A stretch of DNA of 63,719 nucleotides, the filler included, from Octopus bimaculoides (lineage: Eukaryota): assembly GCF_001194135.2 (NCBI RefSeq). It is 9 parts of 9 records of this genome, joined end to end, with 100 filler letters (N's around TTAATTAATTAA, not from the genome) between each part and the next. Parts side by side here need not be neighbours in the genome. Positions count along the whole stretch, not along the records: positions 4,421 to 32,989 come from NC_068982.1; 8 more parts are not named here. One strand, given 5' to 3'. A model generated the notes under the pieces. That model saw nothing but the letters and a program-made list of their open reading frames with translations, was not told the DNA's origin and ran no database searches. The position numbers and the translations under genes are program-made. This document shows, piece after piece, positions 27,946 to 29,060 of the stretch; position 1 is the stretch's first letter, and each line of letters opens with the position of its first letter.

Positions 27946-28399
27946 ATAATATATANNNNNNNNNNNNNNNNNNNNNNNNNNNNNNNNNNNNNNNNNNNNN
28001 NNNNNNNNNNNNNNNNNNNNNNNNNNNNNNNNNNNNNNNNNNNNNNNNNNNNNNNNNNNNNNNNNNNNNNNNNNNNNNNNNNNNNNNNNNNNNNNNNNNN
28101 NNNNNNNNNNNNNNNNNNNNNNNNNNNNNNNNNNNNNNNNNNNNNNNNNNNNNNNNNNNNNNNNNNNNNNNNNNNNNNNNNNNNNNNNNNNNNNNNNNNN
28201 NNNNNNNNNNNNNNNNNNNNNNNNNNNNNNNNNNNNNNNNNNNNNNNNNNNNNNNNNNNNNNNNNNNNNNNNNNNNNNNNNNNNNNNNNNNNNNNNNNNN
28301 NNNNNNNNNNNNNNNNNNNNNNNNNNNNNNNNNNNNNNNTATATATATATATATGTATGTATATGTATGTATGTATGTATGTATGTATATATGTATGTC

Positions 28400-28852
28400 T
28401 GTATATGTTAAGATTTGTATGTATTGTTTTATGTATGTATTCTGATGCATATAGTTGCATGCCTAACATGCTCATATATACTTAAATGATTAACTTCTGG
28501 AAAGTTTTACAGATCTTTACAGTTTCAGTGATGGATTGGATCTGTAGTTTTCGAATCAGCTTTCTTCTTTCTGGCTTTGAGAAGCCTAATTTCCCAAGAT
28601 TGGTTTTTAGGCAGTGTGTTACATATCCCAGTTCAGCAATAATTACAGGTATAAACCTGAGCTTATAAACTGGAGAGAGTAGCTGTAGATTTCTCAAAAG
28701 TTCAGCGTAGGTATTTTCTTTCTCGCTGATCTTTAGCTTTACGTTGTCATCCGCTAGGCAGCTGATTTCCACAACTGTACATAGTTTCTCTTCTCTATCC
28801 CAAATTATTATGTCAGGTCTCCCATCTTTACATTTTATTGAAGTTTTCTCTG
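28400..28852 (-). mobile_element. 5'-truncated REL-endonuclease non-LTR retrotransposon (CRE/NeSL/R4-group-like), with ~120 open codons
   Basis: KCKDGRPDIIIWDREEKLCTVVEISC...KISEKENTYAEL...FIPVII.ELG...TVKICKTFQKLII*: a PD..E..K REL signature. Confidence 0.85.
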
Positions 28853-29060
28853 ATGTATGTATGTATGTATGCTTAGTATAGTATAGTATAATTCGAGTAT
28901 AATGCGAGTATAATTCGAGTAAAAACTTGTAACGTGCATTTAAGCGTTCTTATGTCGTTATTTGACAACCACATGATATCTAATTGGATCTCTTGGGATC
29001 TTCTCTCCCTCTCTGGACACAAGGAACCGCAACAACTAACATTCATGAAGAACTTTATTC

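What the first reader, a model, noticed from the sequence alone, without database searches (positions are those of the whole stretch)
28400..28872. REL-endonuclease retrotransposon apparently targeting (CATA)n tetranucleotide microsatellites
Seen: two independent copies (28.4-28.85 kb minus, 49.65-50.16 kb plus) are truncated at different points, yet both 5' junctions abut (CATA)n in the element's orientation (gcatacatacatacatacatca|gagaaaac and (cata)n cgtacatatca|tgagag), and the 3' end is followed by (CATA)n. A tail cannot explain 5' junctions. Established: REL elements are often sequence-specific (R2/R4 rDNA, CRE and NeSL spliced-leader genes, Dong TAA). I do not know of a described (CATA)n-specific family. 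Inference: a new target specificity that may both exploit and seed the very abundant (TACA)n repeats of this genome. The copy here retains ~120 open codons including RPDIIIWD..VE..K, suggesting recent activity. Caveat: n=2 and CATA repeats are common.
Basis: partly seen in the sequence, partly recalled or inferred. Interest (0 to 1): 0.75.

Follow-up and report, generated by a model that had tools for sequence, protein, structure and literature searches.

The report
CATA-repeat-targeting LINE fragment in octopus
This is a dead, front-truncated copy of an octopus jumping gene (a LINE with a restriction-like endonuclease) whose whole lineage inserts, always in the same orientation, into (CATA)n microsatellites; this adds a new target to a known class of site-specific retrotransposons.

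Summary
The core of the finding holds. Window 28850-28485 (minus strand) is the last 122 codons of a non-LTR retrotransposon ORF. It is the restriction-like endonuclease (RLE) domain, with the PD..E..K residues kept. It is cut off at its 5' end directly against (CATA)4.75 (28871-28853). The genome is an octopus.

Relatives fetched from elsewhere show the same flanks, always on the element's sense strand:
- two Octopus vulgaris copies;
- a near-full-length Argonauta copy;
- four full-length elements from assemblies of unnamed origin;
- a 20-kb array with six (CATA)n-flanked copies counted;
- all three close hits of an unbiased metagenome scan.

The cephalopod background is about 0.002 per junction. 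3' junctions are precise (…|CATACATA), while 5' junctions are ragged. This is the signature of target-primed reverse transcription.

- The (CATA)n after the ORF in the window is an internal 3'UTR microsatellite. The real 3' end lies in the assembly gap.
- The second copy cannot be checked.
- "Recent activity" and "seeding" are not shown.

The architecture is that described for R4/Dong: an N-terminal three-helix domain without zinc fingers, then RT, CCHC and RLE. Classical Dong targets (TAA)n, and the APE-type Waldo elements already target (ACAY)n. I found no published (CATA)n-specific RLE family, but I could not check Repbase or Dfam.

The parts
28853..28871 (-). 5' flanking target remnant: (CATA)4.75 on the element's sense strand. 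Two extra bases 'ca' (28852-28851) follow before element homology starts.
   Evidence: Sequence read. Exact-repeat scan. The same arrangement is seen in L001, L005, L009, L011-L014, L004 and L006.
28485..28850 (-). 5'-truncated ORF remnant, the last 122 codons: the restriction-like endonuclease domain and the C-terminal tail of a single-ORF non-LTR retrotransposon. The RT and the CCHC knuckle are lost by truncation. Putative catalytic residues are kept: D (RPD) at 28814-28812, E (VVEIS) at 28769-28767, K (SEKEN) at 28721-28719.
   Evidence: Translation. 80% and 70% identity to Octopus proteins P0001 and P0002. 66% to P0003 and 50-54% to full-length CATA-flanked elements. Profile match to the R2 RLE domain.
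28482..28484 (-). Stop codon TAA of the element ORF.
   Evidence: Same position in L001 and L007.
28441..28481 (-). Proximal 3'UTR (unique sequence gtatatatgagcatg...).
   Evidence: Aligned with L001 and L007.
28340..28440 (-). CATA-rich microsatellite internal to the 3'UTR, expanded in this copy. The core gaatacatacataaa is conserved in all three copies of this family. It is not the 3' flank.
   Evidence: TRF row 28340-28440. Alignment A3.
27956..28339 (.). Assembly gap (N). The distal ~115 nt of 3'UTR (...ggcaagaaatcttRaaataaa...) and the 3' junction should lie here. Neither is assembled.
   Evidence: The distal 3'UTR is present in L001 10465-10582 and L007 ~760-877.

Best explanation
The window holds a 5'-truncated, non-functional copy of a single-ORF non-LTR retrotransposon of the RLE (R2-like) superfamily. 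Its architecture is that described for R4/Dong, and its lineage integrates sequence-specifically and orientation-specifically into (CATA)n microsatellites.

Inferred mechanism:
1. The element protein has an N-terminal three-helix, Myb/SANT-like domain, then RT, a CCHC knuckle and a PD-(D/E)xK endonuclease. It binds (CATA)n duplex DNA.
2. It nicks the (TATG)n strand at a fixed phase.
3. It uses the freed 3'-OH to reverse-transcribe the element RNA from its 3' end. A conserved 3'UTR hairpin probably positions the RNA.
4. The far end is joined imprecisely, often after incomplete reverse transcription. This leaves 5'-truncated copies that still abut upstream (CATA)n.

Shown: the domain identity; the flanks on both sides, on the sense strand only; precise 3' and ragged 5' junctions; tandem same-strand arrays.

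Inferred: which domain reads the repeat, the nick position, and the role of the hairpin.
For: Identity:
- Octopus homologues.
- 1910 relatives, with RT + CCHC + RLE and no APE in the full-length ones.
- The C-terminal profile hits the R2 CCHC/RLE domain at E = 3.7e-7, aligning C..C..H..C, RH, KPD, (D/E)V and K..Y.

Target, cephalopod copies:
- Window: 5' (CATA)4.75.
- O. vulgaris L001: 5' (CCAT)n(CATA)3, truncated at a different codon.
- O. vulgaris L005: 5' (CATA)21.
- Argonauta L009: (CATA)15 upstream, and CATACACA... after the 3' end.
- L007: 3' ...atctcga|CATACATACGTAC.

Target, other sources:
- L011, L012, L013 and L014 are full-length elements with (CATA)n at both ends.
- L004 has (CATA)n at both ends, plus 13-nt mini-copies.
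- L006 is a 20-kb array with at least 7 same-strand tblastn matches, six of them counted as (CATA)n-flanked copies. It has 523 nt of CATA runs on the sense strand and 0 nt antisense.
- All 3 close hits of an unbiased metagenome scan are CATA-flanked.
- Among the 177 fetched proteins, 3 read through sense-strand (CATA)n (6-residue criterion; 2 more carry shorter stretches) and none reads through the antisense repeat.

Statistics: background 0.0019 per junction, about 1e-11 for 4 of 4.

3'UTR hairpin: 36 of 36 cells paired, 5 of 6 pairs with compensatory changes, 0 of 500 shuffles as good.
Against: - No biochemical evidence. The nick site and the reading domain are inferred.
- The window copy's own 3' junction is missing (gap), and its 5' repeat is short (19 nt).
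- L001's 3' flank is only CATATATAT, and L005's is (AT)n followed by acatacatatat.
- Because the target is a repeat, target-site duplication or deletion cannot be read. I also cannot separate 'repeat carried at the RNA 3' end' from 'repeat of the target'.
- Pfam does not recognise the fragment.
- The fold search of the N-terminal domain is not significant (best E = 2.3; a Myb domain ranks second at E = 4.1).
- Most fetched loci come from assemblies whose organism I could not name.
Confidence: 0.85

Rival explanations
1. The (CATA)n belongs to the element, as a templated 3' tail like the microsatellite tails of CR1/L2/I elements. On this view 5' adjacency arises only because new copies land in the tails of older copies (self-tail targeting). 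There is then no recognition of free-standing genomic (CATA)n.
For: Head-to-tail arrays [copy-(CATA)n]xk on one strand in L006. The octopus family carries its own CATA-rich stretch in the 3'UTR. With a repeat target, tail and target cannot be told apart.
Against: The 5' repeats of the window, L001 and L005 copies are preceded by sequence that is not element 3' end: an 11-bp tandem repeat in the window and (CCAT)n arrays in L001 and L005. Landing in a (CATA)n tail is still (CATA)n-specific integration, so this rival changes the history, not the specificity.
Confidence: 0.1
2. Passive association. The element inserts non-specifically but accumulates or survives in CATA-rich, low-recombination or AT-rich regions, as proposed for Drosophila Waldo-A/B near CA repeats.
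For: Cephalopod genomes are microsatellite-rich: 57 TRF rows in the 28.6-kb piece.
Against: Junctions lie within 0-2 nt of the repeat, not merely near it. Orientation is sense at every one of 24 assessable junctions and antisense at none. The 3' junction phase is constant (...|CATACATA in about 10 of 11 copies). The background probability is 0.0019 per junction. A sister family is instead flanked by (CTTA)n.
Confidence: 0.03
3. Chance: two or three coincidences in a genome where CATA repeats are common.
Against: There are now at least 17 independent insertions across several families and sources, and p is about 1e-11 for the four cephalopod 5' junctions alone.
Confidence: 0.01

Closest known systems
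Dong and other R4/Dong-clade elements (Bombyx Dong, DongAg, DongBg)
   Same: Single ORF with RT, CCHC and a C-terminal RLE. N-terminal Myb/SANT-like domain without zinc fingers. Insertion into a microsatellite in a fixed orientation. Frequent 5' truncation. R4/Dong elements are reported as abundant, with some recently active families, in cephalopods (PMC7998251, PMC8967140, PMC13282606). A distant relative (L016, 34% identity) ends in (ATT)n, a TAA-type repeat.
   Different: The target here is the tetranucleotide (CATA)n, not (TAA)n or 28S rDNA. Clade membership by RT phylogeny was not tested. RepeatMasker-style labels in octopus also include 'Hero', which I cannot exclude.
R2 (28S rDNA-specific, RLE)
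   Same: The RT region is homologous to solved R2 proteins (E = 1e-24). The CCHC + RLE domain is too (E = 3.7e-7). The TPRT signature is the same: precise 3' junction, variable 5' junction.
   Different: No N-terminal zinc fingers. The target is a microsatellite, not rDNA. No HDV-like ribozyme was detected at the 5' end by Rfam.
Waldo (WaldoAg1/2, WaldoFs1; R1 clade)
   Same: Targets (ACAY)n, which includes (ACAT)n = (CATA)n (PMC3812793). The repeat itself is therefore not a new LINE target.
   Different: Waldo uses an N-terminal APE endonuclease and belongs to the R1 clade. The present lineage has a C-terminal RLE and no APE. This looks like independent convergence on the same repeat.
Togen ((TG)n-specific, NeSL-related) and microsatellite-specific HERO families
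   Same: RLE-type LINEs that are specific for simple repeats (PMC4640811).
   Different: They target different repeats. Their relationship to this lineage is unresolved here.

Membership tests
RLE (REL-endonuclease) non-LTR retrotransposons (R2 superfamily) | C-terminal CCHC knuckle followed by a PD-(D/E)xK restriction-like endonuclease | tested here: met
   Profile A2 hits the C-terminal domain of the R2 structures 9nl3, 9dou and 9nl2 at E = 3.7e-7 to 2.6e-6. The printed alignments (9nl3, 9dou) line up C..C..H..C, RH, KPD, (D/E)V and K..Y. The window keeps RPD, VVE and EK. Its CCHC is lost by truncation but is present in the sister copies L002 and L005.
RLE (REL-endonuclease) non-LTR retrotransposons (R2 superfamily) | Reverse transcriptase upstream in the same ORF, and no APE endonuclease | tested here: met
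   RVT_1 is the only family in P0004, P0042 and P0106 and the only significant one in P0034; the precomputed tables list only it for P0153 and P0165-P0174. APE-bearing LINEs appear only as remote hits (P0175-P0177). The window copy itself lacks the RT because it is truncated.
RLE (REL-endonuclease) non-LTR retrotransposons (R2 superfamily) | TPRT footprint: precise 3' junction, variable and often truncated 5' end | tested here: met
   About 10 of 11 3' junctions read ...|CATACATA. The 5' ends fall at different codons, with 0-14 extra nucleotides.
R4/Dong clade | N-terminal diverged Myb/SANT-like domain without zinc fingers (PMC7998251) | tested here: inconclusive
   A conserved N-terminal W..EL..L..Y...G(F/Y)..RL..LW...P motif is present, with no C2H2 motifs. 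AF2 gives a three-helix bundle with core pLDDT about 90. Foldseek is not significant, with Myb domain 1wgx second at E = 4.1. Pfam finds nothing.
R4/Dong clade | RT-domain phylogeny groups with R4_AL/Dong rather than HERO, NeSL or R2 | not testable with these tools
R4/Dong clade | Target is 28S rDNA (R4) or (TAA)n (Dong) | tested here: not met
   The flanks are (CATA)n. Only the distant relative L016 ends in a TAA-type repeat.
HERO clade | RT-domain phylogeny groups with HERO-1_SP/HEROTn | not testable with these tools
   No reference sequences. Some HERO families are reported as microsatellite-specific (PMC4640811).
Waldo / R1 clade ((ACAY)n-specific) | N-terminal APE-type endonuclease | tested here: not met
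   No Exo_endo_phos hit in any full-length relative. The endonuclease is a C-terminal RLE.
Microsatellite-specific LINEs (functional class) | The same simple repeat on both sides of insertions, in one orientation, across independent copies | tested here: met
   Both flanks are (CATA)n in L004, L006 copies 1 and 2, L011, L012, L013 and L014. Sense versus antisense is 24 to 0 at assessable junctions.

The most novel reading that the evidence does not exclude
This lineage may be a previously undescribed, widely distributed branch of R4/Dong-like RLE retrotransposons whose target reading has shifted among tetranucleotide repeats: (CATA)n in most families, (CTTA)n in a sister family, and a TAA-type repeat in distant relatives. 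If so, a small N-terminal three-helix domain and/or the RLE discriminates repeats that differ by a single base. That would give a natural series for working out, and re-engineering, target choice in R2-like integrases. In octopus, the family's own internal CATA stretch would also let each insertion plant a new target, which could help explain CATA-repeat abundance and the head-to-tail arrays.
Probability: 0.3. Interest if true: 0.6.

Novelty: new member of a known kind. Interest (0 to 1): 0.45.

Why it matters
Site-specific RLE retrotransposons (R2 and its kin) are the model for target-primed reverse transcription. They are also being developed as tools for inserting genes.

A lineage with a clean, orientation-specific tetranucleotide target, and a sister family that differs by one base of that target, would be a compact natural experiment on how these proteins choose DNA.

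For cephalopod genomics it explains one class of repeat-flanked 'Dong-R4/Hero' annotations and some assembly gaps. Here the element's CATA tract ends in a gap.

It is not a new kind of element. Microsatellite-targeting LINEs are well known, and one of them targets this very repeat.

Tried and rejected
- Pfam on the 123-aa fragment: no family.
- PDB phmmer with P0003 alone: nothing relevant. Only the 30-sequence profile reached R2.
So I have no read-level check of the gap, of polymorphism or of expression.
- Other copies in the window piece: none of this family.
- P0002 has no contig on record.
- Rfam on two full-length elements: only spurious miRNA hits on the repeats, and no HDV-like ribozyme.
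- Pfam on the N-terminal domain: nothing. Foldseek against PDB: not significant.
The narrower A5 worked.
- Literature. In seven full-text searches (an eighth returned only irrelevant hits) and ten papers read, I found no (CATA)n/(ACAT)n-specific RLE family. Fell et al. 2025 is not held. Repbase and Dfam cannot be queried, so 'undescribed' is not proven.
- Seeding. I looked for element 3'-end remnants next to the other CATA runs of the cephalopod loci and found none.
- I considered whether the distal 3'UTR (after the internal CATA stretch) is a separate SINE-like insertion. I rejected this because the proximal UTR, the CATA core and the distal UTR are collinear in L001 and L007.

Full report
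**1. What is in the window**

Read on the minus strand, the region is ...tatactaag CATACATACATACATACAT ca gagaaaacttcaataaaatgtaaagatgggagacctgacataataatttgggat....
- The perfect (CATA) run is 28871-28853.
- From 28853 an open frame of 123 codons runs to TAA at 28484-28482: SEKTSIKCKDGRPDIIIWDREEKLCTVVEISCLADDNVKLKISEKENTYAELLRNLQLL...VKICKTFQKLII*.
- Homology to relatives starts at about 28850.
- Downstream come 41 nt of unique 3'UTR, then a CATA-rich tract (28440-28340; TRF period 4). That tract ends in an assembly gap (N at 27956-28339).
- Only 1 of 20,000 shuffles of the same bases stays free of stops in that frame. The frame is therefore real coding sequence that has not decayed far.

**2. 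Whose genome, and what protein**

The only close database proteins are from Octopus vulgaris (P0001, 80% identity) and O. bimaculoides (P0002, 70%). Pfam does not recognise the fragment.

A longer relative, P0003, sits on a 673-nt contig (L002). The contig shows that the domain is preceded by a CCHC knuckle: CRLCHTSVEDITHVISSC...RHD.

An exhaustive HMMER search with P0003 found 1910 relatives.
- Full-length members are about 1085-1160 aa (P0042, P0106, P0153, P0165-P0171).
- Where RVT_1 is called (P0042, P0106) it sits at about residues 380-680, and the homologous domain is at the extreme C-terminus.
- There is no APE endonuclease.
- P0042 matches solved R2 proteins over the RT and linker (E = 1e-24).
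- A 30-sequence profile of the C-terminal domain matches the CCHC + RLE domain of the same R2 structures (E = 3.7e-7). It aligns C..C..H..C, RH, KPD, (D/E)V and K..Y.

The window copy keeps the three putative catalytic residues: D of RPD, E of VVEIS, K of SEKEN. It has lost everything upstream, so it is a fragment that was dead on arrival.

**3. Is the (CATA)n association real?**

I fetched the DNA around relatives. Every informative locus shows the repeat on the element's sense strand.

Cephalopods:
- L001 (O. vulgaris OX597824.1). The copy is truncated at a different codon (ISEKENTY). It is preceded by (CCAT)n CATACATACATAC ca.
- L005 (O. vulgaris OX597815.1). This is a P0003-type family. 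(CCAT)n(CATA)21 at 8925-9009 lies directly before a copy truncated in the RT.
- L009 (Argonauta hians). This is a near-intact element with the ORF in three pieces. (CATA)15 lies upstream, and its 3' end reads ...gaaataaaaaagaga|CATACACACA.
- L007 (a Logan assembly). It has the same 3'UTR as L001, and its 3' end reads ...gaaataaatctcga|CATACATACGTAC.

Other sources, organism not named in the records:
- L011, L012, L013 and L014 are full-length elements of 4.1-4.5 kb. L012 has an intact 1158-aa ORF. All four have (CATA)n at both contig ends.
- L004 has both flanks, plus 13-nt 'mini-copies' (aatgaatgtaaag) alternating with (CATA)n.
- L006 is a 20-kb stretch with at least seven same-strand tblastn matches from several families. 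Six are counted as (CATA)n-flanked copies, and the copies in its first third are separated by pure (CATA)26-35 tracts. It has 523 nt of CATA runs on the sense strand and none on the other.

Two less biased samples agree:
- A scan of JGI metagenome contigs with a C-terminal profile returned four loci. The three close ones (56-59% identity) are all CATA-flanked. The distant one (34%) ends in (ATT)n, a TAA-type repeat.
- Among the 177 fetched proteins, gene callers read through translated sense-strand (CATA)n (HTYIHTYI) in three cases and through the antisense repeat in none. Two further proteins (P0001, P0046) carry shorter such stretches.

In 89.6 kb of cephalopod DNA, the chance that a random position and strand lies within 8 nt downstream of a CATA run of at least 10 nt is 0.0019. 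Four of four cephalopod 5' ends do so, which gives about 1e-11. Chance and passive accumulation are excluded.

**4. Corrections to the observation**

- Aligning the window copy with L001 and L007 shows that the CATA-rich tract after the stop codon is internal to the 3'UTR. The core gaatacatacataaa is conserved. In complete copies it is followed by about 115 nt more, ending ...ggcaagaaatcttRaaataaa.... In the window this distal part and the 3' junction fall in the gap.
- The window copy is 86% identical to the O. vulgaris copy over 316 nt. It also has substitutions at otherwise conserved positions. It is not evidence of current activity, although a 2026 repeat annotation reports recently active Dong-R4 and Hero families in O. 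vulgaris (PMC13282606).

**5. How it most likely works**

- 3' junctions are precise and in phase: about 10 of 11 read |CATACATA.
- 5' junctions are variable. They fall at different codons, with 0-14 extra nucleotides.
- Orientation is invariant.

This is the footprint of target-primed reverse transcription after a strand-specific, phase-specific nick. I infer cleavage of the (TATG)n strand as 5'-TATG^TATG, so that the primer ends ...TATG-3'.

Full-length relatives share an N-terminal domain with the motif W..EL..L..Y...G(F/Y)..RL..LW..HP, and no zinc fingers.
- AlphaFold models it as a three-helix bundle, with core pLDDT about 90.
- The PDB fold search is not significant, though a Myb domain ranks second.
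- This matches the Myb/SANT-like domain described for R4/Dong elements and proposed there to direct site choice (PMC7998251).

About 45-60 nt before the 3' end, six families share the element CCTTG-[6-bp stem, 5-nt loop]-CGG.
- All 36 cells are paired, and 5 of 6 pairs show compensatory changes.
- 0 of 500 shuffles do as well, and all slid controls fail.
- I hand-aligned these sequences, so the result is suggestive. The hairpin is a good candidate for the RNA feature that the RT recognises.
- The octopus window family has a diverged version of this region, which I could not fold convincingly.

**6. Comparison with what is known**

- RLE LINEs are typically target-specific, and several target microsatellites: Dong (TAA)n, Togen (TG)n and some HERO families (PMC4640811, PMC3812793, PMC7998251).
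- (ACAY)n, which includes (CATA)n, is already the target of the APE-type Waldo elements of the R1 clade (PMC3812793). So neither the kind of element nor the repeat as a LINE target is new.
- Cephalopod repeat papers list abundant 'Dong-R4' and some 'Hero' LINEs, and none that I read discusses their targets (PMC8967140, PMC13282606, PMC10294476).
- In the searchable literature I found no RLE family described as (CATA)n-specific.
- Repbase and Dfam, where such a note would most likely sit, could not be consulted.
- Clade assignment (R4/Dong versus HERO) needs reference sequences that I do not have. The architecture and the distant TAA-type relative favour R4/Dong.

**7. Side observations**

- A sister family (43% identical to the window peptide) is flanked upstream by about 270 nt of (CTTA)n (L010). 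Two truncated proteins read through (CTTA)n. The target thus seems to have shifted by one base of the unit within the lineage.
- Several families, including the CTTA one, share a GGACGTGT motif 17-30 nt inside the 5' junction; in L003, L011/L013 and L014 it extends to GGACGTGTKGATTRYCGCTCT.
- An antisense tRNA-like head abuts (CATA)n repeatedly in L006, P0113 and P0164.

**8. Verdict**

The 5' junction is real. The 3' claim is mis-assigned for this copy. The second copy is not checkable.
- Novelty is modest. This is a new member of a known kind of element, possibly with a new target for its class. It has some value as a natural series of tetranucleotide specificities.

Noticed in passing
L010 840-1113 (and proteins P0032, P0122): A sister family (full-length copy, 44% identical to P0153) is flanked upstream by about 270 nt of (CTTA)n instead of (CATA)n. 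Two truncated relatives read through LTYLLTYL, which is translated (CTTA)n. This suggests a one-base shift of target within the lineage. L010's 3' side is rearranged, with (TAAG)n plus an antisense tRNA-like element, and cannot be interpreted.
   Followed up: partly
L009 13555-13584, L011 4396-4425, L012 4238-4267, L014 3950-3979, L015 1057-1086, L004 ~3404-3433: A conserved 3'UTR element, CCTTG-[6-bp stem / 5-nt loop]-CGG, lies about 45-60 nt before the 3' junction. All 36 cells are paired and 5 of 6 pairs show compensatory changes. It is a candidate RT-recognition hairpin. In the window copy this region would lie in the assembly gap.
   Followed up: yes
L003 ~19-39, L011 ~99-119, L013 ~123-143, L014 ~136-156, L010 ~1131-1138: A conserved 5' motif, GGACGTGTKGATTRYCGCTCT, sits 17-30 nt inside the 5' junction of full-length elements from different families. 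The CTTA-flanked family shares the GGACGTGT core. Its function is unknown. Rfam finds no ribozyme.
   Followed up: partly
L006 1-20477: A 20-kb head-to-tail array with at least seven same-strand matches to this lineage, from several families; six are counted as (CATA)n-flanked copies. The copies in its first third are separated by pure (CATA)26-35 tracts. All CATA runs are on one strand. The region around 15.0-16.6 kb looks like a segmental duplication, because the 3'UTR and flank are identical.
   Followed up: partly
L006 9290-9363 and 17490-17545; proteins P0113, P0164: An antisense tRNA-like sequence (...ggctcgaaccagcgacccatgg...ctaccacctgagctatc) ends directly against sense-strand (CATA)n in at least four places. 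It may be the 3' module of a non-autonomous passenger, or a SINE inserted in the opposite orientation. Unexplained. ARAGORN calls no tRNA.
   Followed up: no
L004 2003-2260: 13-nt units (aatgaatgtaaag), resembling the element's 3' terminus, alternate with (CATA)n several times upstream of the main copy. They look like extremely 5'-truncated insertions in tandem.
   Followed up: no
window 5141-5440 (+) and 6498-6959 (+): Two further degenerate RLE-LINE remnants of a different, older family. One is a C-terminal piece (...ILWDMPIHTDREIKAKIPDIVVRDHQEK...). The other is an N-terminal RT piece. Both have stop codons. (TGA)15(GAG)15 follows the first at 5512-5600.
   Followed up: partly
L001 10068-10149; L005 8905-9009: In both O. 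vulgaris copies the upstream (CATA)n is itself preceded by (CCAT)n. This is a compound microsatellite. I could not tell whether it is part of what is recognised or just a common octopus repeat context.
   Followed up: no
L016 3365-3867: A distant relative (34% identity in the RLE domain) from a JGI metagenome ends in (ATT)n/(GTT)n, a TAA-type trinucleotide repeat as for classical Dong. This links the CATA lineage to Dong-like elements.
   Followed up: partly
window 4421-32989: The piece is extremely rich in simple repeats (57 TRF rows in 28.6 kb) and contains several assembly gaps that start inside microsatellites. The gap next to this element is one of them.
   Followed up: no
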